From the IMG/VR virus record IMGVR_UViG_3300042516_005475, positions 62,001-126,000 of that record: a DNA stretch of 64,000 bases, one strand, 5' to 3'. The position numbers and the translations under genes were made by a program. How positions within the stretch are numbered: position 1 is the first letter of the stretch; every line of letters starts with the position of its first letter. Below are positions 764 through 63,999 of the stretch, piece by piece. The notes beneath the pieces were generated by a model, which saw only the letters and a program-made list of their open reading frames with translations, was not told the origin of the DNA and did not search any database.

Positions 764-774
764 TAAATATTTAC

Positions 775-3135
775 ATGGGTGTAAAAGATAGTAACACACA
801 GGCTATAATAGATGCCATTACAAATCTTGTAAAAGAGACGCAGCAATCCAACCGTATTGTTGAAAGAGAGATTAAAAATCTAAGCGTCAACACCAAGTCT
901 TACATTGAGAAAGCACAAAGTAGTGCAAACTTTGAAAAGGTTTTTGAGTCCTTTTCAAAAGAATTCTCTACAAATATATCTGAATCAATTAATGAAACTG
1001 TTAAAGATGCAAATGAGAAGACCTTTAAGCAGCTAAAAGAAGGTATTCAGTCTAAAAAGCAGGAGATAGAAAAAAGAAAAAAGGATTTAAAGAGCTCTGC
1101 ATCCCTTGGACCTGAGTTTCAAAAAGATCTTAACAAAAAAATTAAGCAATCTGAAAAAGAGTTAAGAGAGCTTATTGAAAACTACGATAAAACTGCTAGA
1201 ACAAACAACCAGAATTTAATTCAGCAGATTAGAGAATCTCAAGCTAAACTAACAGAAGAGCTTACTGGTGGTCTACAGGAATTTGGTAAATCTTCCTTTA
1301 AAAACTATGTAAAAGAAACAAACAATGTAGATGAAGCACTAGTAAAATATAAAAACGCTTTAAAAGAACAGTATACTTCCCTTGAAAAAAATGTAGAGAC
1401 AAGAAAAAAACTTGGCTTAACTGACAAGAAAATGGAAGAAATAAAAGAAGATCTTTATGATTCTTATTTTAAGGAACTAGAAGCTCAGGGTAACAGAGCA
1501 GATATTGATGAAAAGACAAGAAAAGTTCTCACTGACAAATTAAAGAGAGAGCAAATATTAGCTGGTAGATCTACCTATGAACAAACTTATGGTAAGACTT
1601 CTTCTATAGGCCAGCTAGCTGGTAGATTAGCTGATTTTACTACAAGTAGATACAAAAAGCAAGATCAAAATACCTCTGCTTTGGGTAAAGCCTTTAACGC
1701 AGGTTTAGGTGCTTTATTTAAAGGTAAAGATGCTAAGGAACCTTTCCTAGAAGCAGATAAAAACGACTTATCAACAAAACCATCTATTACTCAAAAAGAT
1801 ATAGAAGGTGGAGAAGGTAGCACTTATATTAAACCATATAGTGAATCAGAAAATAAAGAAACTGTTGAAACAGCTGAAGCAGATAAAATAGCAGCTGAAA
1901 ATGCAAATGCTTCTGTAAATCCTTCTGCTCAAGTAGAGGCTCTAGAAGCTATTCAACAATCATTTGAAGAAGCAAAAGAAAATGTACCGTTTAAGGTAGT
2001 TATATCTGACCTTGATCCAAAAGCTCAAAAAGGAATGACTGCTGCATTTAATGAGGCTTTTAAAGAATCTTTAGAGCCAATAGTAAAAGATGCTTTAGCT
2101 ATTGCAATACAAGGCGGTCAAAAAGGTATGGTTAAAGCTTTAGGTAAGCCAGAAAAAAAAGAAAAGGAGGATGGTTCTATAATAGACGTAGAAGATATAA
2201 TAGATTTAATCCCAAAAGGTAAAAAAGGTTTCTTTAAAAAGACTGCTCAAAGAGGGAGAATTGCTGCTAAAAAAGCTGCGAGAGGTATTGGGAGAGCTGC
2301 GAGAGGTCTTTCAAGAGTAGCTACAGGAGGTGTTGGTGTAGGTGGTTTACTAGGTACAAATGTAGGAGCAATTGGTAGTTTAGGAGCAGGTGCTGTAGCA
2401 ACTTCTGGTCTTTTAGCTGCTGGTACAGCCTATGGTGGTTACAAAGCTGGAGAGGCTCTAGAAGAAAACTTTGGTTTAGGTACTAAGGCTATTGAAGCAG
2501 TAGGAGTAAACAAAGAAACAAACCAACTAGAAAAAACTCAAGAAGATTTAAACAGCAAATTGCAAGATGTTTCAAAAATTAAAGATCCAAACGAGAGGAG
2601 AATAGCATATTTTGAGACTCAATTAGACACTTTAGAAAAACAGAAAACAATTCAGTCTGGAGATGATAAAGCTCAAACTGAACGTATGATTACTGTTGTT
2701 AAAGGTAAGTTAGAAAAACTTAAAAACCCACCTAAAGTTGAACCTGCTCCAGCTGCTAAACAGGCTTCTAACCCTGAAATAGGCGCAGCAGCTAATGTTG
2801 CTCCAGCTGTTATATCAGCTGCTACTCCTGCAATTGGTGTTGCAGCTAATGTTGCTCCAGCTACAACAGCCTCTCCAATAGCTGGAGCAACAATGCCAAC
2901 AATTACAGCTAATATTCCTCAACCAAAAGATGTTTCTCCAGAGCTTAACACAAATAACAAGCTAACTGAGCAAACCAATCAAATACTTGGAGATTTGGTT
3001 AAAGTTATGGCTGGAAAAGACTATAACCCTACATCTATTACACCAATAATGGTTTCTCAGGCTGCTCCTAGCCAATCGACTGGACAAACACAAAGTCCTG
3101 CTTATCAATTTAGATCACAGAACAGGCTAGAATAA
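775..3135 (+). CDS. Tape-measure / baseplate hub (gp29-like) coiled-coil protein
   Basis: 786 aa. Long K/E-rich helical N-half, Gly/Ala-rich hydrophobic stretch (GAGAVATSGLLAAGTAYGGYKAG), low-complexity C-terminus; position in the tail module. Confidence 0.45.
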   Translation: MGVKDSNTQAIIDAITNLVKETQQSNRIVEREIKNLSVNTKSYIEKAQSSANFEKVFESFSKEFSTNISESINETVKDANEKTFKQLKEGIQSKKQEIEKRKKDLKSSASLGPEFQKDLNKKIKQSEKELRELIENYDKTARTNNQNLIQQIRESQAKLTEELTGGLQEFGKSSFKNYVKETNNVDEALVKYKNALKEQYTSLEKNVETRKKLGLTDKKMEEIKEDLYDSYFKELEAQGNRADIDEKTRKVLTDKLKREQILAGRSTYEQTYGKTSSIGQLAGRLADFTTSRYKKQDQNTSALGKAFNAGLGALFKGKDAKEPFLEADKNDLSTKPSITQKDIEGGEGSTYIKPYSESENKETVETAEADKIAAENANASVNPSAQVEALEAIQQSFEEAKENVPFKVVISDLDPKAQKGMTAAFNEAFKESLEPIVKDALAIAIQGGQKGMVKALGKPEKKEKEDGSIIDVEDIIDLIPKGKKGFFKKTAQRGRIAAKKAARGIGRAARGLSRVATGGVGVGGLLGTNVGAIGSLGAGAVATSGLLAAGTAYGGYKAGEALEENFGLGTKAIEAVGVNKETNQLEKTQEDLNSKLQDVSKIKDPNERRIAYFETQLDTLEKQKTIQSGDDKAQTERMITVVKGKLEKLKNPPKVEPAPAAKQASNPEIGAAANVAPAVISAATPAIGVAANVAPATTASPIAGATMPTITANIPQPKDVSPELNTNNKLTEQTNQILGDLVKVMAGKDYNPTSITPIMVSQAAPSQSTGQTQSPAYQFRSQNRLE

Positions 3136-3146
3136 TAAATAATTAT

Positions 3147-4640
3147 ATGGCCAGTACGTCCCAACAGCAAATAGTAAGTCAGTCTAGTGTACTTTTTAAA
3201 TTTGAAGTACCTAACTATGATGATGGAATTGCTGGTTCAAACAGAGTTCTAAATAGTGAGTTTGTTGCTATGGCGAGTGACAAATTTAACGGTACTAGCA
3301 ACGCTGGTATTACAACCCCATTCGCTGGATTGTTAGGACCATCTTCAAAAGCTCCTAAACTAGTCCCTATATCTTCTGCTCCTATTGATATAAAAAATAA
3401 TTTTGCATGGACTTCTAGTAAGGCTGACCCAGCAAGAGCTGACATGCCATATGTCTATTTAACAGAAAAAATTGTAGATAGGTCCTCTCGCTTACAAAAC
3501 CTAATGTATAGCACAGTTTCTTTGCTACAAAGCCCATTAGGAACAGTTGCTGGTGCTGCTATAGGAGCTGGAGCAGGTTCTTCTCTAGGTTCTAGTGCTG
3601 CAGCTGCTATTGGAGCTACTGGAAAATTGGCTTCTGGTTTAAAATTTGCCGGAGCTGTAGTGGGTGGTGCTGGTGGAGCTGTTGGAGCTGATACAGTAGC
3701 AAGCGCATTTTCACAAACATCTCTAGGTGGAGATGTTTACACCAAAAACTTAAAAGCCTTTTCAGGTTTATATAGCACAACACCAACCAATTTTAGCTAT
3801 AAATTACCATTTGTAAAAACTTCTGGTTCAATTAGCAAAGGCATTTCCCAGAATTGGAATGAAGAATCTAATACAATTGGTAATTCCCTTGAAAATATTA
3901 ATTCTAAACTAGAAGAAACAGTAGGCTCTTCAGCAGCTGAAGGTCTTGTTGGCGCTGCTTCTCGTGGAATTGGTACAGCTCAATTACTTGCGAAAGCTGC
4001 TGATGATGTTAATAGCATGGTTTCCGACATGAACAAAAATGTTTTTGCTGCTGCTTATACAGAATCTGCTAAGACATTTGGTTACGGTGGAGCCCCTGGT
4101 TTTGACATTAGTTTTTATTTGTTTAATAACTTGACTTGGGCTGATACAGTAAAAAATTGGTATGTTGTTTTTGCTTTACAGTATCAAAATCTACCAAATA
4201 GATTAAACAGATTAATTTTAACACCTTCAGTTATATACGAGGCTGTTGTACCTGGTTATTTTTATAGCATGTACACATACATAAAGAACCTAAATGTTAC
4301 TTTTTTAGGCTCAAATCTACTAATTGATATTCCAATTATACAGACAAATACCTCAGATGATTCAGTTAGAAACATATCAACTAACCAGGCCCCTTCATCT
4401 GAATCTACTATTAAAGTAATAATGCCTGAAGTGTATAAAATTGATATTTCATTTGAAAGTCTCGTACCAGAATCTCAAAACTTGTTGTATGAGGCTATGG
4501 TACAAACAAGAAGTAATGGTTCAGTCTCACAGGCTGTAGCTGGTCAACAGGTTACATTCCCTAACCCACAAAATAATATAATTCCTAACTCCTCCCGTAA
4601 TGCTGTTCCAATCAACATAACTGGAAATCCAAATTTTTAA
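3147..4640 (+). CDS. Putative baseplate tail-tube initiator/cap (gp48/gp54-like)
   Basis: 497 aa. C-terminal FDISFYLFN...YQNLPNR...PSVIYE...PG...IKNLNVTF resembles the tube-initiator fold; precedes gp53-like gene. Confidence 0.45.
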   Translation: MASTSQQQIVSQSSVLFKFEVPNYDDGIAGSNRVLNSEFVAMASDKFNGTSNAGITTPFAGLLGPSSKAPKLVPISSAPIDIKNNFAWTSSKADPARADMPYVYLTEKIVDRSSRLQNLMYSTVSLLQSPLGTVAGAAIGAGAGSSLGSSAAAAIGATGKLASGLKFAGAVVGGAGGAVGADTVASAFSQTSLGGDVYTKNLKAFSGLYSTTPTNFSYKLPFVKTSGSISKGISQNWNEESNTIGNSLENINSKLEETVGSSAAEGLVGAASRGIGTAQLLAKAADDVNSMVSDMNKNVFAAAYTESAKTFGYGGAPGFDISFYLFNNLTWADTVKNWYVVFALQYQNLPNRLNRLILTPSVIYEAVVPGYFYSMYTYIKNLNVTFLGSNLLIDIPIIQTNTSDDSVRNISTNQAPSSESTIKVIMPEVYKIDISFESLVPESQNLLYEAMVQTRSNGSVSQAVAGQQVTFPNPQNNIIPNSSRNAVPINITGNPNF

Positions 4641-7749: not shown

Positions 7750-8200
7750 TCTCACTTTGCTGATTATTCTTTGCTGATAGCATCATTTTTAAAATCTCCT
7801 CTCTTGAGGCCATAACTTTTACAGCATGGTCGTTAGATTGGAGTTCCTTTTTATTCTCAACATCCATTTTCTTAATTTCAATTGCAGCGTCATTTTTCTT
7901 TTTTTGCAGAAGTAGTTTTGTAAGAGTGTCTAAGGCATTGGTAGAAGCATTAACTAATTCAGAGTAGGCTGCCATCTCTTCTGCTCCTTGAACTGTTTGA
8001 ACAACTCCTTCCATATTTTTAAGCATGCTAATTGAGGAATTAACAATTTCACTGCTATTTTTAAGAACAAATTCCTCAAGATTGTCTATTGTCGCGACAG
8101 TATCTCTAGGCACGTTAACTGTAGATTGCTCTGCACGTATGGTTTGCAGGTCGTTTAAGAATTGTGCGACTGATTCATCTGGGATGTTGGCTTCGTCCAT
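7727..8200 (-). CDS. Helical protein, possibly terminase small subunit (gp16-like)
   Basis: 157 aa. ELVNASTNALDTLTKLLLQKKK...VMASREEILKMM loosely resembles T4-like small terminases; TAAATA lies 5 nt upstream of the ATG. ORF is solid, function is tentative. Confidence 0.4.
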   Translation of the reverse strand: MDEANIPDESVAQFLNDLQTIRAEQSTVNVPRDTVATIDNLEEFVLKNSSEIVNSSISMLKNMEGVVQTVQGAEEMAAYSELVNASTNALDTLTKLLLQKKKNDAAIEIKKMDVENKKELQSNDHAVKVMASREEILKMMLSAKNNQQSEINVTHSA

Positions 8201-8205
8201 ATAAT

Positions 8206-8241
8206 TATTTACTTGAATAATGGTTTTTTCTATGCTATACT
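8206..8241. promoter_or_regulatory. Back-to-back promoters: TAAATA (minus, 8206-8211) and sigma70-like TTGAAT-N17-TATACT (plus, 8213-8241)
   Basis: TTGAAT 8213-8218, TG at 8233-8234 (extended -10), TATACT 8236-8241, dut ATG at 8248. Minus-strand TAAATA lies 5 nt before the ATG at 8200. Confidence 0.7.
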
Positions 8242-8247
8242 CATGTC

Positions 8248-8703
8248 ATGAATATGAAAGAAGAGGTAAAAATCCTGTTTAAACGTACTCACGATCTTGC
8301 TAAGCTCCCTGTTAAGGCTAATCCTGAACCAGCGACCGGCGATTCTGGGTATGATGTATTTGCGGTTGAACAAGTCGTTATTCCTGCTCGAGGTTCAGCA
8401 GTTGTTCCGGTTGGTCTTCAACTAGCATTTATTACTCTTGGTTATTGGTTCCGAATTGAACCTAAGAGTGGTCTGGGCTTCAAGCATGGTTTGCAACCAC
8501 ACTTGGGAATCATCGATAATCAGTATCGTGGAGGCATGGGTATTAAAATCTACAACTTTTCTGATGTTGATTATACCTATAACGTTGGGGATAAAGTCGC
8601 TCAATTCGTTGTCTACGAGTTGGTGAATTCTACTGTTGACTGGAGTGATACCGTTTATGAAACTAATAGAGGATCAAAGGGCTTTGGCTCAACTGGCCGA
8701 TAA
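8248..8703 (+). CDS. dut: Trimeric dUTPase
   Basis: All five motifs present: GDSGYD, PKSG, GIIDNQYRG, VAQ, RGSKGFGSTG. Confidence 0.95.
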   Translation: MNMKEEVKILFKRTHDLAKLPVKANPEPATGDSGYDVFAVEQVVIPARGSAVVPVGLQLAFITLGYWFRIEPKSGLGFKHGLQPHLGIIDNQYRGGMGIKIYNFSDVDYTYNVGDKVAQFVVYELVNSTVDWSDTVYETNRGSKGFGSTGR

Positions 8704-8869
8704 CATTAACATTGAATCAATTGATTGCCCAGAAAGTGGAGAATGTGATGTCAAATACAAAGTCAAACCTGGTTTTTTCGACCTTATTGAAAAGCAAAAA
8801 TTCAAGAAAATGTTCGAAGGAATGGATCTTGACTCTATCGTAAAAACTGTTATACTTGAATACCTGTGA
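8657..8869 (+). CDS. Small hypothetical protein, start uncertain
   Basis: Fills the gap between dut and the clamp loader; its stop overlaps the clamp-loader start (GTGA). In-frame ATG at 8657 overlaps the dut 3' end. Confidence 0.45.
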   Translation: MKLIEDQRALAQLADNINIESIDCPESGECDVKYKVKPGFFDLIEKQKFKKMFEGMDLDSIVKTVILEYL

Positions 8870-9786
8870 ATAAACCTCCGGCTAGTTACATTTGGTTCGA
8901 AAAGTACCGCCCTCAGTCTCTGGAAGAGATTATTCTTCCAGATAACATCAAGGCTACTATTGAAGGTTATGGTCGTGACGAGAAGATACCTCATTTGATG
9001 TTTGTTGGTAAGCCTGGCTTGGGTAAAACCAGTCTTGCAAAGATTATTGCTAAGAGTGTTCTAAAGTGTCAGTATCTGTATATTAATGCTTCAGATGAGA
9101 ATGGTATCGATGCAATTAGAACTAAGGTTGTTGCATTTTCTCAGACTAAATCAATCGACGGTCGAATCAAGATTATTATTCTTGATGAATGTGATGGGTT
9201 GACTCAAGACGCACAAAAGGCCTTGCGTAACGTAATGGAAGAGTTCCATAAAGTAACTAGTTTCATTCTTACAGCCAACTATGGTCACAAGATTATCGGT
9301 GCGTTAACTAGCCGGTGTCAGAAGTTCGATATTCAAATCTCAAAGACTCAATTTGAGAACCAATTGGCTAATATTCTTAATAAAGAGAATGTTACCTTTG
9401 AAAAGGTTCAAGTTGAGACTATTACAGAGCAGTATTATCCTGACTTGCGTATTGCTATTAATGAATTGCAGAAGAATAGCAGGTCAGGATCTCTTCAGAC
9501 AGCTTCTAATAAGCAGAACATTGCTCTTGTAAAAGGCATCTTAATTAATGTTCTTTCTAAGAAAGACTGTACTATTATTCGTCGTCATGTAATTGAGAAC
9601 GAAGAAGTGTTTAACGGAGATTATGTTGGACTGATGCGTCAGCTATTCAACTTCATTAATGAGTTTGAATTTGACGAAAAAAATAAGCGTAAAATGCTCG
9701 TCACCATTGCGGATCACTTGTATAAGTCTGCTTTTGTAATGGATCAAGAGATCAACTTTTACGCTTGTTTGTTGGCGATGGTTTAA
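8866..9786 (+). CDS. Sliding-clamp loader AAA+ subunit (T4 gp44 / RFC small subunit-like)
   Basis: WFEKYRPQ, Walker A GKPGLGKT, NASDENG, Walker B ILDECD, SRC motif. Confidence 0.95.
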   Translation: MNKPPASYIWFEKYRPQSLEEIILPDNIKATIEGYGRDEKIPHLMFVGKPGLGKTSLAKIIAKSVLKCQYLYINASDENGIDAIRTKVVAFSQTKSIDGRIKIIILDECDGLTQDAQKALRNVMEEFHKVTSFILTANYGHKIIGALTSRCQKFDIQISKTQFENQLANILNKENVTFEKVQVETITEQYYPDLRIAINELQKNSRSGSLQTASNKQNIALVKGILINVLSKKDCTIIRRHVIENEEVFNGDYVGLMRQLFNFINEFEFDEKNKRKMLVTIADHLYKSAFVMDQEINFYACLLAMV

Positions 9787-10400
9787 TAACCCTTCATGTA
9801 ACTACCATAACCCATCTTATGCTTCTGTGTATAAGATAGGGTTGTGTTAGTTGTAGGGTTACCTGTTACATTCTTATCTGTCTGAGGAATATTACCTGGA
9901 TCTTCATTACCAGGAAGAGCATCGATCTTAGGGTAGCTTGGGTGTTGAGTATCCATATATCTAGCTGTGCTATTAATTGGCTTAACTGCTTCTGGTTTAA
10001 TAATCTCATTATTTGGTCTTACAAGCTTTGGATTAATAGGTGTTTGAGTTCTATTCTCACCACCTGTCATCATTAATTCAACTAGGTAAGAAGGTACAGT
10101 TATTTTGTCTGTAAAGAGACCTGGTGCAATTTCTCTTGTAATATCAAGATAAAAGGCATCTGGTTCATAATCTTTACCGTTAGCACTGAAACCATATGGG
10201 GATTTAATATGGCTAACACGCAAATAATCACCTGATGTAGCAAGCTCTCTAAGCATGTTGATTTTCTCAACAGACTGAGTCTTAGACCAAGGACCTGTGA
10301 AGGCTTCTTGTTTAATTCTAACTAGATCACCGCAAAGAAACCCGTTGCGAGTAAATCTGTCATAATGTTCTTTTATTACTTGTTCAAATCGAGATGCCAT
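9783..10400 (-). CDS. Hypothetical protein
   Basis: Start refined to ATG 10400 (MASRFEQVIKE) because minus-strand TAAATA lies at 10408-10413; convergent with the clamp loader. Confidence 0.65.
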   Translation of the reverse strand: MASRFEQVIKEHYDRFTRNGFLCGDLVRIKQEAFTGPWSKTQSVEKINMLRELATSGDYLRVSHIKSPYGFSANGKDYEPDAFYLDITREIAPGLFTDKITVPSYLVELMMTGGENRTQTPINPKLVRPNNEIIKPEAVKPINSTARYMDTQHPSYPKIDALPGNEDPGNIPQTDKNVTGNPTTNTTLSYTQKHKMGYGSYMKGY

Positions 10401-10407
10401 ATATAAA

Positions 10408-10440
10408 TATTTATGTAATTCGTTCAAAAATTTATAAATA
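10408..10440. promoter_or_regulatory. Divergent T4-type late promoters
   Basis: Minus-strand TAAATA at 10408-10413; perfect plus-strand TATAAATA at 10433-10440, 8 nt before the gp25-like ATG. Confidence 0.7.
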
Positions 10441-10448
10441 ATTAACAG

Positions 10449-10928
10449 ATGGCAACAGTAAACTTAAACAATCTCTTTAAGAAGCCAGTCAATCCTAATA
10501 GTGCTATAAAGTACATTTATCAGGACTTTAATGTCATGTCTATGGAAACACTTTATACCAATAACATTGCTGCTCGTAAAGTAAAGACTGACCTTAATGT
10601 TTCTTACGATGTCGCTGCTGTTAAAAACAGTATTTCTAATCTTTTAACAACAAAGAAGAGTGAAAAGATATTAAGCCCAGAATACGGTTTAAGAATAGAA
10701 GATTTTTTGTTTGAACCAGTTACAAGCACAACAGCTACTGCCATTGCCAACGAGATTGTCAATGCTTTAACAATATTTGAACCAAGAGTTCAAATAGTAG
10801 ATTTGCAAGTGATACCTTATCCAGATCAATACCTTTATGTAATTAATCTGGCATTGAGAATACCAACATTAAAACAATCTTTTTCCTTGCAAGGAACATT
10901 TCAAGGAGACGCAATAACAATTTTATAA
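10449..10928 (+). CDS. Baseplate wedge subunit, T4 gp25-like
   Basis: AVKNSISNLLTTKKSEKILSPEYG...FLFEP...FEPRV matches the gp25/GPW family signature. Confidence 0.9.
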   Translation: MATVNLNNLFKKPVNPNSAIKYIYQDFNVMSMETLYTNNIAARKVKTDLNVSYDVAAVKNSISNLLTTKKSEKILSPEYGLRIEDFLFEPVTSTTATAIANEIVNALTIFEPRVQIVDLQVIPYPDQYLYVINLALRIPTLKQSFSLQGTFQGDAITIL

Positions 10929-17065: not shown

Positions 17066-17096
17066 TAGAAATAACAAAAATAGATAAATAATTTCG

Positions 17097-19409
17097 ATGG
17101 TTTGCTCTGTACCTAACTTAACTGGATCTTTTGGAAGCTGCGCGCAAGACATTGTTGCAAGCGATTTTAACAAAGATTCTGTGTTTTGGTATATAGAAAA
17201 TGAAGATTCTGTATACAATTTTAAGCTAACTCTCTGCCCTTTCCTATCAGCTACACCATTAAAAATTGTTTATCCAGAAATTGAAATTTTTAATTTAAAG
17301 ACGTTTAATAAAACATACGCTTTCCCTTCATTTAACACAGTTGACGAGCAATCTTTTCCAAGTTTACTACCATTCTCTGTTAATAGCTTACCAAGCGGAG
17401 CAGAGTATAATATAAAAAGTATAGACCAACCAGTATTAAGTTACAACTCAATTAATAACATTTTTGATTTATCTTTTATTGGTAGATTTCCTGCTGGAGT
17501 AGAGGGTTTATCAATTTTTAATTACCGTTTCTTAAAGAATAATCAGACAGTTAATCCTTACGCAATAAACATTTATACTCCAAGTCAGTTTATTTTCTCT
17601 TCTAACTTTGCTGATGGTTATTTCTCTAAGTTCTTAGATTTACAAACATATCCTAAGAGTGTTGGTTTTTATGTGTTGCCCCTTTCAGTTAATACAATAG
17701 AATATCCTTGTAATTATGAACCCCCCTGCCAAAGTATTACAGCTGTTCACAATTTAGCTAATGACAGCTTAAAGTTTAACTCTGCTAGTGTTGATACTTT
17801 AAGCACATTTGGTAACAATGTTACTTTTTTAAACTATGTTTGCGGTTTTAACCCTGATAAAGACATACAGATAGTATTTGATGCTGCAGCTTATATTTTT
17901 AATAATGAGCAGGTTTTAGGTACAGTTAATAGTACAGAAATTTGTTCTGCTAGAACAGTTACTAATTTTACTAGAGGGGGAGCAGGAGAAGGTTTTTGTG
18001 TTTATTTTTACCAATTAACAAGCTTTGCTGATTTTATTGGTTCAGGACCAGCTTCTTGTTTTGGCTATGCTCCTGGCTCAGCTGTTGATGTAGACTACTT
18101 AAACGGAACACCTATGATGTTTCCGTTTGGTATGTATGGTGGTTATTTGGGGTTAGGTTTTGATATTGGTGGAGATTTCGGTACTCGTTTACATGGAAAA
18201 AGTGCTGTTGGGTCTGCTTCTCCTAATGCAAAACGTCCAAACACTATTACATTAAGAAGCAGTCAATTAGATAATTTTAATGTTTTAACAACAACAAATA
18301 ATTTAACAGCATACAATTTATATCTTGCACAACAAGTCACTTCTGTAGATGAAGTTAAGTTTAACACCTACAAAGTTGTATTAGATAATCACGGCAAAAG
18401 AATTAGAGCAAGTGTATTAGATTGTCTTTCAAACGAGTTTATAGATATTTTTTGCTATGAGGTTGACTTTGCAGATGGCTGTGATGCTTCTCCTTCAATT
18501 TTATTTCCTGGAATAAGCTTTTCTACAAGTGAATATACATGTAATTTTGAAATTAAAAATGTTTCATTTATAGGAGCCTTAGCTGACACTGAAGCAGATG
18601 CTTGTGGTAGAGTGCGTATACCAACACCAACTCCAACCTGCCCAATCTTCCTGCTATCTCCTACACCTACACCAACAAGTTCTGTTACACCAACACCAAC
18701 ACCTTCAATATCAGTATCTTCTACAGTTACACCAACTGTCACACCTACAAATACAGTAACCCCAACTTTAACACCTACAAAAACAGTTACACCTACAAAT
18801 ACTGTTACACCTACTCCTACTTTAACTCCTTTATACTCCCCAACCCCAACAAGTACTGCAACTCAAACAGTTACACCTACACCTACCATTACCCCAACTT
18901 TAACAGTTACACCTACAAAAACAGTTACACCTACACCTACCATTACCCCATCAGTAACAGTTACTCCAACACCATCCCCTGCTGCAACAAATGTGTATTG
19001 TTGGTTTACTCCTTCAATTTACATTTATCTTTCTAGCTTTGCCTCTTGTAGAGCTTATTTTACTGCTAATGGTATTTCTGAGCAATCAGGTGGAGTTATT
19101 ATTAGGAGTAATATTGCGGCGCTGGGTGGTATTGATTTAACCAAGATATTAAGATTTATTTTCAATAGACTGCCAACTGTTTCAAATATTTCTAGTACTA
19201 ATAATTGGGGTATATATGGATCAACTACACCAAACTATTATGTAAACTACACATACGATTCTGGTAATAATGATTATACTGTTGACATTTATAGAACAAG
19301 CGATAATGCTAATATTGCCAGTATTTCAAGCTTATCGTTCGTAAATAATGATGCAGCTCAGGAATCGTTTATAGCCTGCCAGTGTTTGTATGTAGCCTTA
19401 TACGTATAA
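17097..19409 (+). CDS. Putative virion adhesin: L-type lectin-like domain + Thr/Pro linker + Cys-containing C-terminal domain
   Basis: [11 protein letters not shown]...GPASCFGY...[14 protein letters not shown]...PNTITLR resembles bacterial L-type lectin domains. TPT repeats at about 18621-18980. C-terminal domain is shared with the 3533-aa protein. Confidence 0.65.
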
Positions 19410-46664: not shown

Positions 46665-46739
46665 GGGAGGTTAGCTCAGCGGCAGAGCAGATCCTTTACA
46701 CGGATAAGGCCAGAGGTTCAAATCCTCTACTTCCCACCA
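46665..46739 (+). tRNA. tRNA-Val(TAC)
   Basis: Acceptor GGGAGGT/ACTTCCC, anticodon loop TT-TAC-AC, T-arm AGAGG-TTCAAAT-CCTCT, encoded CCA. Confidence 0.93.
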
Positions 46740-46818: not shown

Positions 46819-46869
46819 TTTTAATTCGAGAGGTTGTCTCAAACCCATACAATTTGAATAAATAATTGT

Positions 46870-47343
46870 ATGGGTAAAGTTTTTATAAAGTGTTCTTCTT
46901 GTTTAATTCAGATTGAAAAATGGGATTATGAATTAAAAAACATCAAACAAAAAGAGAATTACACCTGTAAAGTTTGTAAAGTTAACAAAAGCAAGCAAAT
47001 TAGTACTTGCCCGATTTGTAAAAACAATTTTATTACATCAGTAAAGAGACCTAGCACAACTTGTTCATATGCTTGCTCAAATAAGTTGTTTAGAACCGGA
47101 CCTAATAACGGTAACTGGAAAGAAGACAGCTATAGAACTACTTGTTTTCATTATCATAAAAAAGAATGTATTGTTTGCAAAGAAAATTTAATTGTTGAAG
47201 TTCATCATTACGATGGAAATCACGATAATAATAATCCAAACAATTTAATTCCGCTGTGTCCAACTCACCATCAGTACATGCACAGCAGTTATAGAGATAA
47301 AATAAATACCATTGTAGAAGAATATAAGAAGAATTTTAAATAG
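46870..47343 (+). CDS. HNH endonuclease with N-terminal CxxC zinc-ribbon repeats (putative homing endonuclease)
   Basis: EVHHYDGNHDNNNPNNLIPLCPTHH; several CxxC pairs; immediately downstream of the tRNA pair. Confidence 0.85.
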   Translation: MGKVFIKCSSCLIQIEKWDYELKNIKQKENYTCKVCKVNKSKQISTCPICKNNFITSVKRPSTTCSYACSNKLFRTGPNNGNWKEDSYRTTCFHYHKKECIVCKENLIVEVHHYDGNHDNNNPNNLIPLCPTHHQYMHSSYRDKINTIVEEYKKNFK

Positions 47344-48382
47344 CCATGATCTTCATGGCTGTGCTATAACCAGAGCCAGTTGACCAGTCGTAATTAAATC
47401 TCCAATCTTTTTTCTTTTCTAAGAGTTGGCTTACTGGAATGTTAGAATTGACAAGATCAATCTTAATATCAGTACTTTCACAATCAAAGGCTAATAGGTA
47501 ATCGAAGTTCTTATTGAGCTGGTAGCACTTTAATTGTATAAAGCCAACTAGCCTCAATAAATCGTCAGCCTGAGATAAGGTTCTCTTGTCGATGTATTTG
47601 GTTCTGATGCTTCTTACAATAGAAGACTTTCTGCTTTCAATATAAGAATCAAGAGTGCCACTAATTAGCTCCTCTTTACCTGGATCATCAATATCATATC
47701 CAGCTAATACAGAGACCAAGTCTTTAATATCTTCTAAGTCACCTTCTGCAGCCTTGCGACCTAGATCTTCTTTGCTAGCTCCTTCTGTTCTCTCTGTCTC
47801 TAATCTAGCACCTGGAGTAGACTTAATTTCAAAAGTCTTCCCATCTAGTTCCATATCACCTACAGAGGCGCTAGTACCACCTGCGAAAATCTCAAAGAAA
47901 ATTTCACCTGGACCAACAGCCTTACCTTTTTTAGCCTCTGTCTTTTGTTTTACTAGGCGAGTAAGTTCTGGAATATGAGAAGAAACGTTGCCTTTGTAAC
48001 AGGTAGTAAGAATCTCAACAAGAGAACCACTATCGCTGCTTTCTCCGTAGAGTTTTAAAATCTTGGCAAACTCATCTTGATTTTCTTTCTTGAAAGTCAT
48101 ACCAGTCTCCTTGATAAAGACTGCAAATGAGTTGGCGATATCAGAGCCTGGAGCAACTCCAGCCTTTATAAGAGACTCTTTAAACAAGACTGTGTCAACT
48201 TCTTCTCCAGAAACATCGTTTGCCTTAAGAGCTCTTCTGAGAACATTGTTGTAGTAGACTTTATCCAAGGTGGCAATGTGCTCAACTGAGTCTTGATCAG
48301 GGTCCTGCTTAAAGATTTTCACCTCATCCTGTTCTCTGAGGACTTTTCGGGCATAGATATCTTTGAGCTTTGATACGATCAT
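47336..48382 (-). CDS. Hypothetical protein with PD-(D/E)xK-like motif
   Basis: VGPGEI...VGDMELDGKTFEIKS. Start refined to ATG 48382, 5 nt after minus-strand TAAATA (48388-48393). Confidence 0.55.
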   Translation of the reverse strand: MIVSKLKDIYARKVLREQDEVKIFKQDPDQDSVEHIATLDKVYYNNVLRRALKANDVSGEEVDTVLFKESLIKAGVAPGSDIANSFAVFIKETGMTFKKENQDEFAKILKLYGESSDSGSLVEILTTCYKGNVSSHIPELTRLVKQKTEAKKGKAVGPGEIFFEIFAGGTSASVGDMELDGKTFEIKSTPGARLETERTEGASKEDLGRKAAEGDLEDIKDLVSVLAGYDIDDPGKEELISGTLDSYIESRKSSIVRSIRTKYIDKRTLSQADDLLRLVGFIQLKCYQLNKNFDYLLAFDCESTDIKIDLVNSNIPVSQLLEKKKDWRFNYDWSTGSGYSTAMKIMAI

Positions 48383-48416
48383 AGAAATATTTATGCGCTG
48401 ACCTAAATAAAAACAG

Positions 48417-49212: not shown

Positions 49213-49251
49213 GTTGCTTTTATCTAGGAGATAGTAAATAATATAGTCAAT

Positions 49252-49327
49252 GCGGTATTCGTATAGTGGCTTATTATGCGAGCTTGCCAAGCTTGAGACG
49301 AGGGTTCGATTCCCTCATACCGCACCA
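49252..49327 (+). tRNA. tRNA-Gly(GCC)
   Basis: Acceptor GCGGTAT/ATACCGC, anticodon loop TT-GCC-AA, T-arm GAGGG-TTCGATT-CCCTC, CCA. Confidence 0.93.
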
Positions 49328-49367
49328 TTTCTCTCTAAAAAATAATCGTAGCCTAATAAATATTGAC

Positions 49368-49784
49368 ATGGCTAGACCTACCAAAACGAGAGATTCTTTT
49401 AAATGCTTAAACTGTGGAGCTGAAAAAGAAATGATGCATCACTTAGTTTCAAAAAACAAGTTTTGCAACCCTGCTTGCAGAGGAGAATAAAAACAATTCT
49501 TAAACAAGCAAAAGTGGTTAAATGGGGATTCTCAAGTAATTGAAAGAACAACAATTCGTAGATATATTACAGAAGAGAGAGGCTATAAGTGTGAGTGTTG
49601 CAATATATCTAATTGGAATAACAAGCCGTTAACACTACAAGTAGACCATATAGACGGAAACCCTAGTAACCATAAACCCAATAATGTTAGATTAATATGC
49701 CCAAATTGTCATAGCCAGCAAGAAAACTGGGGAGCAAGAAATAAAGGATCTGGTAGAAAAAGCAGGGGCATGTCTTTAGCATAA
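49368..49784 (+). pseudogene. HNH endonuclease interrupted by an in-frame TAA
   Basis: TAAATA-N5-ATG start at 49368. Reading through TAA (49488-49490) in the same frame gives YKCECC...LQVDHIDGNPSNHKPNNVRLICPNCHSQ and a stop at 49782-49784. Confidence 0.85.
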
Positions 49785-49800
49785 CAAATAAATAATAGAA

Positions 49801-50544
49801 ATGAACTTTTTAAATCATTATCTTATTCAAGAGAGTAAAGAAAGAGAACAGCTTGATAAAACAATAGACTACTTGTCTAAGAAAGAAAAAGTTCTTCTTC
49901 TCACCACTTCTAATCGTTGGACAGGTCATACTGACGATATTCCTAAGTCTACTCAATTAGCTATCTATGTTCAGGAACAATTAGGAAAGCAAAAGGCTAC
50001 ATTAATTGAAGTACCTAAGCTAAAGATCTATCCATGTGAAGGAAATGTTAGTAGCAGCCCTGATAAAGGTGGTAATCACTGTGGTACTAAGGATGCCTTG
50101 TTAAAAGACAAAGAAAAGAACCCTAGTGGTTTTCATAGATGCTGGGCTAGTATCAATAACAAGGATGACGAACTTTGGAAGATTAGTAAACCGTTGTTCG
50201 AGAGTGATGCAGTTCAGATATTTGGTTCAGTTAGATGGGGACAAACAAATGGTTACTATCAAAAGCTAATTGAGCGTTTAACCTGGATCGAAAACAGACA
50301 TTCAACGCTGGGTGAGAAGAACATTGTATCTAATATTGATGCTGGTTTAATATTGATTGGTCAGAACTGGAATGGAAAAGATGTATTAGATACTCAAAAG
50401 CAGGTATTAGAGTTTTTTGGATTTAAAACACCTAAAGAGATGTTCTGGAACTGGCAATACACACAAAATGCTACTTTAGAAACAAAAGAGTCGTATAAGA
50501 AGGCTTATACGACATTCGAGAAGCAATTTGTTATTGAAGATTAA
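49801..50544 (+). CDS. Flavodoxin-like / NADPH-dependent FMN reductase family protein
   Basis: LLLTTSNR...KSTQLA, IYPCEG...C...RCWAS, ESDAVQIFGSVRWG...KLIERL. Confidence 0.75.
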   Translation: MNFLNHYLIQESKEREQLDKTIDYLSKKEKVLLLTTSNRWTGHTDDIPKSTQLAIYVQEQLGKQKATLIEVPKLKIYPCEGNVSSSPDKGGNHCGTKDALLKDKEKNPSGFHRCWASINNKDDELWKISKPLFESDAVQIFGSVRWGQTNGYYQKLIERLTWIENRHSTLGEKNIVSNIDAGLILIGQNWNGKDVLDTQKQVLEFFGFKTPKEMFWNWQYTQNATLETKESYKKAYTTFEKQFVIED

Positions 50545-50907
50545 TTACTCTAAGGTCAATAGATACTTGAGCTTATTGAGTTCAGCAAGCATCTCGTCTC
50601 TGATGTTCATAAGATCTGTATCAGCATTCTTATCAGGAATCTCTAAAGCTACAATATACTCTACAGCATTATTTACAAAACCATCTACAGGCAATTGATC
50701 TGTATTAAACAAGTCAACTGTAGAAGAACCACCTTTGGCTTCTATTCTACCGTATTTACCCATGTATACTTCAATGAATTGATCAATCAAACCATTGAGA
50801 GCATCATAGGCTCCACCAAGAGCCTGATGTTGAGCATAGCTAGTAGTCTGCCAATGATAGACTTTGAGCTGATTGAGAATAGTAAGTAGATTCTTAATAT
50901 ATTTCAT
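50545..50907 (-). CDS. Ferritin/Dps-like protein (DUF5856-like)
   Basis: QLKVYHWQTTSYAQHQAL...DQFIEVYMGKYG...DLMNIRDEML..LNKLKYLLTL. Start refined to ATG 50907 (TAAATA-N5-ATG). Confidence 0.8.
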   Translation of the reverse strand: MKYIKNLLTILNQLKVYHWQTTSYAQHQALGGAYDALNGLIDQFIEVYMGKYGRIEAKGGSSTVDLFNTDQLPVDGFVNNAVEYIVALEIPDKNADTDLMNIRDEMLAELNKLKYLLTLE

Positions 50908-50911
50908 ATAG

Positions 50912-51370
50912 TTATTTATTAAACAATAGTCTAAAAGTTCGTTGAAAGTGCTTAGTTGAATAGTGTCTAGCATCTACTTCCCAAACATTCCAATAGTACT
51001 TATCTGTTTTATTATCTACATCGTGAGCTGTATAATCAAGTTCCTTTTCTTTTACTTTTAGCAGTTTATCTTGTATCCAGTGCCTGAATTCGTGTAATAA
51101 ATCTCTTAAAAATATACGTCTTCTTGACTTCTTATCATATTTCTTCCTAAATGGAGCAACCCCAATATCTAAAGTATTACTCCCGAAGTAATAACCACTA
51201 TCTAAGAATCGAGAATCAGCCTTAATGTTTATGTGTCTTTTAATTTTTTTACCTGGAAACTCTTTTTCTAATAATTTTTCAAAGGCTAATTGTAATTTCT
51301 TTCTTTCTATGCCAAATCTCAAGAACCAATCGGCTGTTTTCTTTCCGTACCGTACTTGGATTTTAACCAT
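50912..51370 (-). CDS. Putative zinc metallopeptidase (HEXXH)
   Basis: LLHEFRHWIQ with downstream WEVDAR third-ligand pattern. Confidence 0.6.
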   Translation of the reverse strand: MVKIQVRYGKKTADWFLRFGIERKKLQLAFEKLLEKEFPGKKIKRHINIKADSRFLDSGYYFGSNTLDIGVAPFRKKYDKKSRRRIFLRDLLHEFRHWIQDKLLKVKEKELDYTAHDVDNKTDKYYWNVWEVDARHYSTKHFQRTFRLLFNK

Positions 51371-62463: not shown

Positions 62464-62825
62464 TGTGTAGGAGGTTGTGGGTTGATTGAAGCAGAGGTAA
62501 ATGTAGGTTTCTTAGGACCAGGTGGTAATCCTTGAGCTTTTCTTAAAGCATCGCTTAACGAGGAAACCATTGTTTGTAAATCCTTTATTTGCTTATATGA
62601 GTTCTGAACATAAGCATTAGTTTGCTGGTCAATTTTGCTTGGTTGAGCGTTTGGAGAACTATCTGTAGCAGCTTCTGTGTCTGAGTATTGAGACTTTACG
62701 CTTGTTTGTGGAGCGTTGATAAGCTGTTTACCACCCGGAGCAGTTAAATTAACCTTAGGTACAGCTGGCATCGTAATACCAGGAGCTTCTTCTAAAAGGC
62801 TCTTACACAATTGATCGAAAGTCAT
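62460..62825 (-). CDS. Hypothetical low-complexity protein
   Basis: Start refined to ATG 62825 (MTFDQLCKSLLEE) by TAAATA-N5-ATG; stop overlaps the lysozyme start. Confidence 0.65.
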   Translation of the reverse strand: MTFDQLCKSLLEEAPGITMPAVPKVNLTAPGGKQLINAPQTSVKSQYSDTEAATDSSPNAQPSKIDQQTNAYVQNSYKQIKDLQTMVSSLSDALRKAQGLPPGPKKPTFTSASINPQPPTQ

Positions 62826-62826
62826 G

Positions 62827-63999
62827 TTAATATTTATTGAAGCTATTAACAATTTTGTCAACTTCTGTTTGCACTGTATCAACAGATATGCTTTTCATAC
62901 AGTTTGCTCTAAACGGATTCAAATGATCTTTTATCCATTTTAAATGTTCAAAGTCTTCCTTTACTTTACCAACAATATATGTTGTAGACGGCCAAAACGC
63001 GTGATCATTATGAGCAGGAGTAACAACAATACCTTTTTTACCCATTAAGCCACACAAATGCTGAAAGAATGTATCTAAACCTAAAAAGAATCTACTAGTT
63101 ATTATTAAAGCAACTAACTCTCCAAAGCTTCTGTTAAAAAAGTATTCATTTACGTTATTAACTTTAAAATCTTCCTTAACACCTACTTGGATTATGTAAT
63201 AGCCTTTGCTTTGCAGATTAGAAACAATTTGTTCCCACCTACTAAACTCCCATGTTTTATTACTTAGCATTAACCCGTTACTTGGACCTTCTCTATTAGA
63301 AGCTGATGGAGCCAGCAATACTATCTCTTTACCAGAAAATTCGTTTCTTATTTTAGAAACATCATCTAAATTGTAAAAGTATTTCCATCTTCTATCATCA
63401 AACAGGTCTTCTTCTCCATTCATAGAGAAGTAAGCATACTCGAGTGTTTTGCTTTTATTTTCACTACCATGTTCGTAAACATTAAAACCTAACCCGTTTA
63501 ATTCCCACAAATCATATCTCATTTTTATATCACCTGATAAATCGTATAAAAATGGATAGGCTGTTCCTACAGTTAGACTATTAGTCTTTTTTAAAGATTC
63601 AAGAAGATTAAATGCACAAACGTTATCTCCAAGAGCCTCGTGAATATTAATCCATCTAGTGGAATTGTCTAATAATCTCTTTTCTTTCTTTGTTTCGAAC
63701 CTAGCTTTATCTTCTTTATGGTATTCCGGCTCACTAATTTCGTCTCCCATTCTAACTGCGAAATCGTAAATAGCCCACTCTAATGTTATATACTTAAAGT
63801 CTATACCACCAATCTTCCTAGCCTTTTTAATATCAGAAATATAAATGTATCCCTTTGTGTATTTTTTCTCAAAAGCAAATTCCTCTATGTTAAAGTCATC
63901 ATTTGTTAACAATACTTTTTTTGTTCTGCAAATGTTTATTAACTTATTCCAGTTATAAGCATTTTCATTTGTCTCATAACCTGTTTCACTGTGTCTGGT
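62827..63999 (-). CDS. GT9-family (heptosyltransferase-like) glycosyltransferase, 5' end outside the window
   Basis: Frame is open to the window edge. KTWEFSRWEQIV...IIQVG...ALIITSRFFLGLDTFFQHL...GKKGIVV...CMKSISVDTV. Confidence 0.75.
   Translation of the reverse strand, partial: TRHSETGYETNENAYNWNKLINICRTKKVLLTNDDFNIEEFAFEKKYTKGYIYISDIKKARKIGGIDFKYITLEWAIYDFAVRMGDEISEPEYHKEDKARFETKKEKRLLDNSTRWINIHEALGDNVCAFNLLESLKKTNSLTVGTAYPFLYDLSGDIKMRYDLWELNGLGFNVYEHGSENKSKTLEYAYFSMNGEEDLFDDRRWKYFYNLDDVSKIRNEFSGKEIVLLAPSASNREGPSNGLMLSNKTWEFSRWEQIVSNLQSKGYYIIQVGVKEDFKVNNVNEYFFNRSFGELVALIITSRFFLGLDTFFQHLCGLMGKKGIVVTPAHNDHAFWPSTTYIVGKVKEDFEHLKWIKDHLNPFRANCMKSISVDTVQTEVDKIVNSFNKY

What the first reader, a model, noticed from the sequence alone, without database searches (positions are those of the whole stretch)
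764..62836. TAAATA-N5-ATG: late promoter placed so that the start codon is at +1 (leaderless mRNA programme)
Seen: TAAATA lies exactly 5 nt before the ATG at 775, 3147, 24159, 45706, 46870 and 49368 (plus) and at 8200, 48382, 50907 and 62825 (minus). It lies 6-8 nt before ATGs at 17097, 32381, 49801, 10400 and 10449, and also precedes the tRNA genes (46652, 49235). No Shine-Dalgarno is evident at these starts. Many internal genes are coupled by TAATG overlap or a 1-nt gap (4642, 5034, 6604, 10930, 12738, 15071, 19411, 25061). Established: the T4 gp55 late promoter TATAAATA spans about -13 to -6, so a 5-nt spacer puts the A of ATG at the transcription start. Inference: late genes are translated from leaderless mRNAs plus reinitiation. 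Caveat: several starts were themselves chosen using this motif.
Basis: partly seen in the sequence, partly recalled or inferred. Interest (0 to 1): 0.68.

Follow-up and report, generated by a model that had tools for sequence, protein, structure and literature searches.

The report
Late promoters fused to start codons
In this 230-kb uncultured T4-like phage the late-gene promoter box (A/C)ATAAATA sits exactly five bases before the ATG of about 40 genes, so transcription should begin on the start codon itself and give messenger RNAs with no leader, an arrangement that T4 and cyanophages lack but that the SAR11 phage HTVC008M shares.

Summary
TAAATA-N5-ATG occurs 11 times in the window against 1.8 expected. 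Genome-wide there are 41, of which 36 open 50 or more codons. It is the most frequent of all 4096 hexamers at 13 spacings; same-composition hexamers average 2.2.

The motif is best read as a T4-type, gp55-dependent late promoter:
- The genome encodes a gp55 late sigma, a gp45-like clamp and a gp44 clamp loader.
- The box has no -35 element and an AT-rich downstream segment.
- It heads capsid, portal, terminase, tail-tube and baseplate genes, and none of 12 replication genes.
- It also precedes four tRNA genes at N7-N11, which argues against a purely translational role.

In T4 the box spans -13 to -6, so N5 puts the A of ATG at +1. An internal calibration agrees: sigma70-like TTGnnn-N17-TATAAT promoters sit one base further out (N6-N7) before early genes.

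T4, S-PM2 and Melnitz place the box about 19-38 nt upstream. HTVC008M and this phage's uncultured relatives share the N5 peak.

No transcript 5' ends could be examined, so leaderless transcription remains an inference, though a strong one.

The parts
764..777 (+). Late promoter box TAAATA (764-769), N5, ATG 775 of a 786-aa ORF (775-3135). The previous gene's TAA stop (761-763) abuts the box.
3136..3149 (+). Late promoter box, N5, ATG 3147 of a 497-aa ORF (3147-4640)
8198..8211 (-). Late promoter box (8206-8211 on the minus strand), N5, ATG 8200 of a 157-aa ORF (7727-8200)
8213..8250 (+). Sigma70-like early promoter TTGAAT (8213-8218), N17, TATACT (8236-8241), N6, ATG 8248 of the dUTPase gene (8248-8703). 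It shares the 47-nt divergent spacer with the late box at 8206-8211.
10398..10413 (-). Late box (10408-10413 on the minus strand), N7, ATG 10400 of a 205-aa ORF (9783-10400)
10433..10451 (+). Late box TATAAATA (10433-10440), N8, ATG 10449 of the gp25-like baseplate wedge gene (10449-10928). It heads the tightly coupled run 10449-17065 (gp25-like, gp6-like and two further ORFs).
17085..17099 (+). Late box, N6, ATG 17097 of a 770-aa ORF
24148..24161 (+). Late box, N5, ATG 24159 of a 300-aa ORF. The orthologues in G003 and G005 keep N5.
32369..32383 (+). Late box, N6, ATG 32381 of the 3533-aa ORF (32381-42982)
45695..45708 (+). Late box TATAAATA, N5, ATG 45706 of a 314-aa ORF (phrog_1221)
46652..46739 (+). 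Late box (46652-46657), N7, then tRNA-Val (46665-46739), followed by tRNA-Pro (46745-46818)
46859..46872 (+). Late box, N5, ATG 46870 of an HNH endonuclease gene (157 aa)
48380..48393 (-). Late box, N5, ATG 48382 of a 348-aa ORF (47336-48382)
49235..49327 (+). Late box (49235-49240), N11, then tRNA-Gly(gcc) (49252-49327)
49357..49370 (+). Late box, N5, ATG 49368 of a 40-codon ORF, a likely remnant of a 138-aa HNH/McrA-like gene
49789..49803 (+). Late box, N6, ATG 49801 of a 247-aa ORF
50905..50918 (-). Late box, N5, ATG 50907 of a 120-aa DUF5856 protein
62823..62836 (-). Late box, N5, ATG 62825 of a 121-aa ORF (62460-62825)
8866..9786 (+). gp44-like clamp-loader subunit, part of the late-transcription and replication clamp machinery. 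It has no late box.

Best explanation
The motif (A/C)A-TAAATA-(A/T)TTn(T/C)-ATG is the late promoter of a deep-branching T4-like phage. It is recognised by host RNA polymerase core carrying the phage gp55-type late sigma, probably helped by the phage gp45-like sliding clamp. As in T4 it is a lone extended -10 box without a -35 element. In T4 that box occupies -13 to -6, so a five-base spacer makes the A of ATG the first transcribed base. About 40 late transcription units (virion genes, homing endonucleases and others) would therefore be made as leaderless mRNAs. Their 5'-terminal AUG would be bound directly by ribosomes. The genes behind them in each unit would be translated by termination-reinitiation across 1-nt gaps or overlapping stop/start codons.

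The same logic applies to part of the early programme. Canonical sigma70-type promoters (TTGnnn-N16-18-TATAAT) lie N6-N7 before ATGs, one base further out, as that promoter geometry requires.

Shown: the motif, its spacing, its gene class, the gp55, gp45 and gp44 genes, the tRNA association, conservation in relatives, and the contrast with T4 and cyanophages. Inferred: the exact transcription start and the mode of ribosome loading.
For: Statistics:
- 11 versus 1.83 in the window.
- A genome-wide N5 peak of 41.
- 31 of 265 motif-independent starts.
- The top cell of all hexamers at all spacings, 36 versus a mean of 2.19 for same-composition hexamers.

Promoter identity:
- gp55 homologue, phrog_234 at E 7.8e-27 and 41% identical to T4 gp55 (35.7% in the local tblastn), lying between a uvsW-like helicase and gp47/gp46.
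- gp45-like clamp, phrog_223 at E 2.7e-8, and gp44.
- No information upstream of -13, and TTG at -35 in only 6 of 36 sites against 15 of 28 in the sigma70-like class.
- An AT-rich N5 segment, as described for T4.
- NATAAATA is the accepted cyanomyovirus late promoter.

Gene class: the major head, portal, large terminase, tail tube, gp25 and a virion structural protein carry the box. None of the 12 identified replication or recombination genes does.

Not merely translational: four tRNA genes carry the box at N7, N7, N8 and N11, where I estimate about 0.13 expected from the motif density.

Start-site geometry:
- The T4 box is at -13 to -6.
- Position -1 is a pyrimidine in 31 of 31 sites against 63% at other genes.
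- The sigma70-like -10 hexamers peak at N6-N7.
- A Pribnow box localised 6-8 nt from the start is the accepted genomic signature of leaderless transcription.
- A divergent gene pair has only 10 nt between its ATGs, inside the palindrome CATAAATATATTTATG.

Comparative evidence:
- Close relatives keep box-N5-ATG before the portal gene while the flanks diverge.
- Orthologues at about 30-60% identity keep the box at N5-N7.
- G003, G005, G001 and G002 and Pelagibacter phage HTVC008M show the N5 peak.
- In HTVC008M, 6 of 6 checked sites coincide with GenBank starts of genes annotated as baseplate tail tube cap, baseplate wedge subunit, tail tape measure and DNA end protector.
- T4 peaks at N23-29, S-PM2 at N19-38, and Shine-Dalgarno hexamers top the list in T4 and Melnitz.
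Against:
- The -13 to -6 numbering is transferred from T4 and E. coli polymerase to an unknown host.
- N5-N9 is also the range of a ribosome-binding-site spacer, and the genome has no other recognisable ribosome-binding signal, so an added RNA-level role cannot be excluded.
- gp33 was not found.
- A secondary peak at N9 (9 genes, implying 4-nt leaders) is unexplained.
- 5'-end folding energies do not differ between the motif genes and the others.
- About 55 of 119 ATAAATA copies lie more than 100 nt upstream of the next same-strand gene start, mostly inside coding sequence, so the 7-mer alone is not sufficient.
Confidence: 0.75

Rival explanations
1. The box acts on RNA as a non-Shine-Dalgarno translation-initiation element (an AU-rich enhancer or ribosome-binding site) inside longer polycistronic late transcripts. 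The real promoters lie elsewhere.
For: No Shine-Dalgarno signal exists anywhere in the genome. The N5-N9 range resembles a ribosome-binding-site spacer. Many boxes sit only 1-11 nt after the previous gene's stop. AU-rich, non-Shine-Dalgarno signals near the start are known in Bacteroidetes.
Against: The box precedes four tRNA genes. It matches the gp55-type promoter consensus, and gp55 is encoded. It is confined to about a fifth of genes, the late class, and is absent from replication genes. The N5 peak is much sharper than typical ribosome-binding-site spacings. A distinct DNA-level promoter class shows the same abutment, shifted by one base. The -1 pyrimidine and +1 purine rule holds.
Confidence: 0.12
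2. The box is an RNA-processing site: a phage or host endoribonuclease cuts in AU-rich sequence and creates the 5' ends of late mRNAs and tRNA precursors.
For: It occurs before both mRNAs and tRNAs and between closely packed genes. AU-rich single-stranded sites are typical endonuclease targets (general knowledge).
Against: No dedicated nuclease was linked to it. The sequence is the known late-promoter box of the phage family. It is strongly enriched in oriented intergenic DNA, including divergent spacers where no read-through transcript is expected. The parallel N6-N7 class has full -35 and -10 promoters.
Confidence: 0.05
3. The pattern is a compositional or annotation artefact: AT-rich upstream regions, TAA stop codons near starts, or starts picked by eye with the motif.
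For: The genome is 36% G+C. Some boxes overlap or abut the previous gene's TAA.
Against: Shuffles give 1.83 against 11. Same-composition hexamers average 2.19 against 36. Motif-independent starts and public gene calls agree. T4 at 35% G+C has no such peak.
Confidence: 0.01

Closest known systems
Phage T4 late promoters (TATAAATA, gp55/gp33/gp45-dependent)
   Same: A lone extended -10 box with the core ATAAATA, no -35 element and an AT-rich downstream segment. It heads virion genes. gp55, gp45-like and gp44 genes are present.
   Different: Position -13 is A/C, not T. In T4 the box lies about 23-29 nt before the ATG, with a Shine-Dalgarno leader. Here it lies at N5 with no leader. gp33 was not detected.
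Cyanomyovirus late promoter NATAAATA (S-PM2, Syn9, P-SSM2)
   Same: The same relaxed consensus and the same gp55 system. These are the nearest cultured relatives by gp6 and gp20, at about 28-33% identity.
   Different: S-PM2 shows no N5 peak; the box-to-ATG distances are about 19-38 nt. In P-SSM2, ATAAATA-N5-ATG is no commoner than its reversed control (3 versus 3).
Pelagibacter (SAR11) myophage HTVC008M
   Same: A sharp TAAATA-N5-ATG peak (12 sites). It is the top hexamer-by-spacing cell and coincides with annotated starts of late genes.
   Different: It is only distantly related (TerL N-terminus 28%). It has no sigma70-like N6-N7 class. Its spacer consensus is GTAnn rather than ATTnT. A study of pelagimyophages reported that late-promoter prediction was unsuccessful.
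Leaderless transcription in Actinobacteria and Deinococcus-Thermus (GeneMarkS-2 'group C': Pribnow box 6-8 nt from the start)
   Same: The same genomic signature, a -10 box at a fixed short distance from ATG, and the same inference.
   Different: There it is a host sigma-A promoter in a cellular genome whose internal genes keep Shine-Dalgarno sites. Here it is a phage-encoded sigma's promoter, and no Shine-Dalgarno is seen anywhere.
Poxvirus late promoters (TAAATG initiator overlapping the start codon); recalled from general knowledge, not tested here
   Same: It works alike: a late-class promoter core fused to the ATG, so that late mRNAs have essentially no templated leader.
   Different: This is a eukaryotic cytoplasmic DNA virus with its own polymerase and poly(A) heads. 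There is no homology.

Membership tests
T4-type (gp55-dependent) late transcription | Phage-encoded gp55 late sigma factor | tested here: met
   G000 28582-29160: phrog_234 'late sigma transcription factor' at E 7.8e-27, and 41% identity to T4 gp55 residues 21-117. The synteny is helicase-55-47-46.
T4-type (gp55-dependent) late transcription | An 8-bp TATAAATA-like box as the only conserved promoter element, with no -35 | tested here: met
   The consensus is (A/C)ATAAATA. Information content is about 0 upstream of -13, and TTG at the -35 position occurs in 6 of 36 sites. Exact TATAAATA is not enriched.
T4-type (gp55-dependent) late transcription | AT-rich segment between the box and the start site | tested here: met
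   The N5 spacer reads (A/T)TT(A/n)(T/C), with G in 0, 1, 1, 6 and 0 of 31 sites at the five positions. The feature is described for T4.
T4-type (gp55-dependent) late transcription | Sliding clamp (gp45) and clamp loader (gp44/62) as activator machinery | tested here: met
   gp45-like protein at G000 44401-45138 (phrog_223, E 2.7e-8). gp44 at window 8866-9786. gp62 was not identified. T4 gp45 itself and PF02916 gave no hit.
T4-type (gp55-dependent) late transcription | gp33 co-activator | tested here: inconclusive
   tblastn and phmmer with T4 gp33 found nothing below E = 0.7. The protein is small and poorly conserved.
T4-type (gp55-dependent) late transcription | The box heads late (virion) genes | tested here: met
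   The major head, portal, TerL, tail tube, gp25 and a virion structural protein carry it. None of 12 replication genes does.
T4-type (gp55-dependent) late transcription | Transcription from the box depends on gp55 and on replication | not testable with these tools
   This needs in vitro transcription or an infection time course.
Leaderless mRNA genes | A -10 type box localised at the distance that puts the start codon at +1 | tested here: met
   The late box is at N5 (the T4 box ends at -6). The sigma70-like hexamer is at N6-N7 (that hexamer ends at -7).
Leaderless mRNA genes | The start codon is AUG | tested here: met
   After TAAATA-N5, ATG opens 60 or more codons 35 times. GTG does so 5 times, at the level of unrelated triplets.
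Leaderless mRNA genes | The mapped primary 5' end coincides with the start codon | not testable with these tools
Leaderless mRNA genes | No Shine-Dalgarno upstream | tested here: met
   There is no Shine-Dalgarno peak at the motif genes, but also none at the other 211 genes. The feature is met but does not discriminate.

The most novel reading that the evidence does not exclude
A whole clade of aquatic T4-like phages has largely abandoned 5' untranslated regions and Shine-Dalgarno pairing. The clade comprises this freshwater-type 230-kb lineage and its marine relatives at about 51-56% portal identity. The cultured SAR11 phage HTVC008M shares the late class, either independently or ancestrally. 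On this reading both the host-sigma early promoters and the phage gp55 late promoters are fused to the ATG, each at its own geometric distance, and operon-internal genes rely on termination-reinitiation. That would imply that their abundant, still unidentified hosts translate leaderless mRNA efficiently. It would also explain why late promoters could not be found in pelagimyophages.
Probability: 0.5. Interest if true: 0.72.

Novelty: new variant of a known kind. Interest (0 to 1): 0.62.

Why it matters
T4 late transcription is a textbook system, but its promoters have always been seen ahead of Shine-Dalgarno leaders. Here the same promoter type is fused to the start codon in about 40 transcription units, and host-type promoters are fused likewise, so transcription start and translation start coincide.

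If confirmed, this has four consequences:
1. It gives a simple rule for calling gene starts and late genes in a large group of uncultured aquatic myoviruses.
2. It supplies the late promoters that a published survey could not find in pelagimyophages.
3. It predicts that the hosts, among them SAR11, are proficient in leaderless initiation.
4. It offers a compact natural promoter-start cassette of 16 bp.

It is directly testable in the cultured HTVC008M and Pelagibacter system.

Tried and rejected
- **Close relatives among cultured phages.** Megablast of 6 kb against the phage collection found nothing.
- **Clamp and co-activator searches.** T4 gp45 as a single query and Pfam PF02916 found no clamp; it was found later through PHROGs. 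T4 gp33, gp62, gp59 and dsbA gave only noise.
- **Ribosomal protein S21.** None in this genome (PF01165), although pelagimyophages carry one.
- **Host.** A portal scan of 185,579 species genomes found no relative. A Bacteroidetes host was considered because Shine-Dalgarno is absent. I judge it unlikely, because the early promoters are TTGnnn-N17-TATAAT and the Bacteroidetes form was rare (TTTG...TAnnTTTG 1 match, TAnnTTTG alone 7).
- **5' folding.** Folding energy of the first 42 nt does not differ between gene classes.
- **Other phage types.** crAss-like or phiKZ-like identity, suggested at first by the 3533-aa ORF, was dropped once the T4-like core genes were found.
- **Literature.** Searches found no report of leaderless late transcription in T4-like phages. 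AR9 and phiKZ transcripts are leadered.

Full report
**What the window is.** The window is bases 62,001-126,000 of a 230,047-bp IMG/VR virus record with 36% G+C, rated complete by CheckV. It is a deep-branching T4-like myovirus. Its gp6-like and gp25-like baseplate wedge proteins, portal, major head protein, large terminase and tail tube are recognisable. So are gp43, gp44, gp46, gp47, gp32 and UvsX homologues. No cultured phage is closer than about 28-33% identity, and the nearest are cyanomyoviruses. The genome carries 24 tRNA genes.

**The observation.** TAAATA-N5-ATG occurs 11 times in the window against 1.83 +/- 1.30 in dinucleotide shuffles. The eleventh, on the minus strand with its ATG at 3450, opens only 11 codons.

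Genome-wide, the distance from TAAATA to ATG has a sharp mode at 5 (41 cases) with a shoulder at 6 (18), over a background of about 4-5 per bin. I called genes without using the motif, taking coding-potential-scored ORFs and their first ATG. With those starts, 31 of 265 have the box at N5, 9 at N6, 6 at N7 and 7 at N9.

Two further controls hold:
- Among all 4096 hexamers at 13 spacings upstream of ATGs that open 50 or more codons, TAAATA at N5 is the top cell (36). The next cells are its own overlapping shifts. The 15 hexamers of the same composition average 2.19 per cell.
- Ten of ten motif-defined products, and the 300-aa product of 24159, exist letter for letter in public gene-call collections on many contigs. 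Independent gene callers therefore chose the same ATGs.

The tight coupling of downstream genes is also real. Genome-wide, same-strand gaps of -4, -1 and +1 occur 17, 14 and 26 times.

- The 8-mer TATAAATA is not enriched (4 against 9.6 expected). The consensus is (A/C)A-TAAATA-(A/T)TT(n)(T/C)-ATG.
- Absence of a Shine-Dalgarno sequence is not special to these genes. The other 211 genes show no Shine-Dalgarno peak either, only an A-rich upstream region.

**What the motif is.** Several independent lines point to a gp55-type late promoter.
1. The genome encodes a gp55 homologue: phrog_234 'late sigma transcription factor' at E 7.8e-27, 41% identical to T4 gp55. It sits in the T4-like order helicase-55-47-46.
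2. The genome also encodes a gp45-like clamp (phrog_223, E 2.7e-8) and gp44 (window 8866-9786). gp33 was not found.
3. The box has no -35 partner. Information content is nil upstream of -13, and TTG at the -35 position occurs in 6 of 36 sites. It is followed by an AT-rich segment. Both features are described for T4 late promoters. NATAAATA is the accepted late promoter of cyanomyoviruses.
4. The genes it heads are the classical late genes: major head, portal, TerL, tail tube, gp25, a virion structural protein and several HNH endonucleases. None of the 12 identified replication or recombination genes has it.
5. It precedes four tRNA genes at N7 (Val), N7 (Gly-tcc), N8 (Thr) and N11 (Gly-gcc). 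From the motif density I estimate about 0.13 such cases by chance. tRNA genes need transcription, not translation initiation.
6. TAAATA is the most enriched oriented hexamer in intergenic regions of 40 nt or more (37 against 7.1).

**Where transcription should start.** The T4 review places the TA of TATAAATA at -13/-12, so the box spans -13 to -6. With five bases after the box, the A of ATG is +1.

Three observations in this genome fit that placement:
- The base before the ATG is a pyrimidine in 31 of 31 N5 sites, against 63% elsewhere. This is the usual pyrimidine(-1)/purine(+1) preference.
- The ATG cannot lie upstream of the start site, and a polymerase cannot normally start much closer to a -10 box. 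N5 is therefore close to the only spacing that keeps the AUG in the RNA without adding a leader.
Canonical TTGnnn-N16-18-TATAAT promoters lie N6 (10 cases with TTG) or N7 (5 cases) before ATGs of early-type genes, for example dUTPase at window 8248 and UvsX at G000 36327. A sigma70 -10 hexamer ends at -7, so N6 again puts ATG at +1.

The two promoter types thus sit at two different spacings, each the one its own geometry requires for a leaderless transcript. A Pribnow box localised 6-8 nt from the start codon is the accepted genomic signature of leaderless transcription (see also the title and abstract listed).

A divergent gene pair at G000 149815/149826 has only 10 nt between its two ATGs, inside the palindrome CATAAATATATTTATG. 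That leaves no room for leaders.

**Comparison with other phages.** The annotation-free histogram separates genomes cleanly.

| Genome | Box-to-ATG pattern | Top hexamer-by-spacing cell |
|---|---|---|
| T4 (35% G+C) | About N23-29 | Shine-Dalgarno (AGGAGA at N5) |
| Melnitz (OM43 phage) | No N5 peak above background (3 sites) | Shine-Dalgarno |
| S-PM2 | N19-38 | No dominant cell |
| HTVC008M (SAR11 phage) | Sharp N5 peak, 12 sites | TAAATA at N5 |
| G001, G002, G003, G005 (uncultured relatives) | N5-N6 peak | TAAATA at N5 |

In HTVC008M, all six sites I checked coincide with GenBank-annotated starts. These include genes annotated as baseplate tail tube cap, baseplate wedge subunit, tail tape measure and DNA end protector.

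In this phage's own relatives:
- Contigs with 77-100% portal identity keep ATAAATA-N5-ATG before the portal gene while the flanking sequence diverges.
- The marine clade at 51-56% portal identity (G003, G005) shows the N5-N6 peak genome-wide and, in G003, the sigma70-like N6-N7 class as well.
- Several orthologues keep the box at N5-N7. Others, such as the portal and head genes of G003, have a different arrangement.

A published survey of pelagimyophages states that prediction of late promoters 'was unsuccessful in PMP genomes'. My literature searches found no description of leaderless late transcription in T4-like phages. The jumbo phages AR9 and phiKZ have leadered transcripts.

**How it most likely works.** After replication begins, core polymerase carrying gp55, tethered by the clamp, opens the (A/C)ATAAATA box and starts on the A of ATG. 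The resulting mRNAs have a 5'-terminal AUG, which ribosomes bind directly. Downstream cistrons, joined by TAATG, ATGA or one-base gaps, are read by terminating ribosomes that reinitiate.

Where the box lies 1-11 nt behind the previous stop, the same gene can also be reached by reinitiation on read-through transcripts. The tRNA units get 2-6-nt 5' leaders for RNase P to remove.

My rough classification of the 268 genes is as follows:
- 46 with a late box at N5-7.
- 13 with a -10 hexamer at N6-7.
- 9 with a late box at N8-10.
- 70 tightly coupled to the preceding gene.
- 25 with longer overlaps.
- 105 other.

The programme is therefore mixed, not wholly leaderless.

**Limits.**
- No RNA data could be examined. 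The start site is inferred from T4 numbering and from internal consistency.
- An additional RNA-level role of the AU-rich box in ribosome recruitment cannot be excluded. I give that rival 0.12 as the main function.
- The host is unknown. Its promoters look like sigma70 promoters of the proteobacterial kind rather than Bacteroidetes promoters, and no host genome carried a relative of the portal.
- The N9 secondary peak, the missing gp33 and the 55 ATAAATA copies lying more than 100 nt from the next same-strand start (mostly inside genes) remain unexplained.

**Verdict.** It is a new variant of a known kind: T4-type late promoters combined with the leaderless architecture known from some bacteria. 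It is testable in a cultured system.

Noticed in passing
window 8213-8250; also G000 21192, 26814, 35919, 36327, 37601, 45708, 170066, 178349, 186073, 226058: A second promoter class: canonical TTGnnn-N16-18-TATAAT lying N6-N7 before the ATG of early-type genes such as dUTPase and UvsX/RecA. This implies leaderless early mRNAs from the host sigma. G003 shares it; T4, S-PM2, Melnitz and HTVC008M do not.
   Followed up: yes
G000 147686, 159297, 171743, 180660, 186927, 187703, 189448, 190640, 192168, 193538, 209431 (outside the window); window 45664: A third upstream family, cTTG(A/C)(G/A)GTTCCTG-N10-12-TATACT, often followed by a conserved A-rich leader (AGAAAATAAGAT-ATG). TTCCTG is the second most enriched intergenic hexamer (17 against 2.7). 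This is possibly an early or middle promoter with an extended -35, or a factor-binding site.
   Followed up: partly
G000 149800-149830 (outside the window): A divergent gene pair whose ATGs are 10 nt apart inside the palindrome CATAAATATATTTATG, so each late box overlaps the other gene's first codons.
   Followed up: partly
window 54443-58564: A 1373-aa collagen-like protein (Pfam Collagen, E 5.7e-123, 15 stretches) in a G+C-rich island (about 0.42-0.45 against 0.36). A late box lies N11 upstream. It is probably a fibre.
   Followed up: partly
window 32381-42982, 25061-28597, 28590-32318: Three very large ORFs (3533, 1178 and 1242 aa) with no Pfam match. The largest is headed by a late box at N6.
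   Followed up: no
genome-wide: G000 18234, 49427, 86159, 195961, 211018, 214046, 220258: A secondary spacing peak at N9 (9 ATGs opening 50 or more codons, of which the seven called gene starts are listed here, over a background of about 2). It would give 4-nt leaders, and the sixth base after the box is a purine in most cases. The sigma70-like class has a matching minor peak at N10. Unexplained.
   Followed up: partly
window 49368-49490: The 40-codon ORF behind a perfect late box clusters with 138-aa McrA/HNH endonucleases from related contigs. Here it looks like a truncated homing-endonuclease remnant next to tRNA-Gly.
   Followed up: partly
G000 22426-23532 (outside the window): A 368-aa protein behind a late box has a weak match to the phage tubulin PhuZ (phrog_4733, E 6e-4; phrog_17961, E 1.3e-8). 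That would be unusual for a T4-like phage if real.
   Followed up: no
G000 52979-55741 (outside the window): The large terminase is 920 aa, much longer than usual. An N-terminal stretch also matches a primase-type family (phrog_510). This may be a fusion or an insertion.
   Followed up: no
L037-L078 (marine relatives), upstream of the portal gene: In the clade at 51-56% portal identity, the portal gene is preceded by a conserved AATAACAATTAATTAAT-ATG block instead of ATAAATA-N5. This is possibly a variant box (ATAACAAT) with a 3-nt leader.
   Followed up: no
window 51797-53920: A class II (B12-dependent) ribonucleotide reductase-like gene lies between late-box genes.
   Followed up: no
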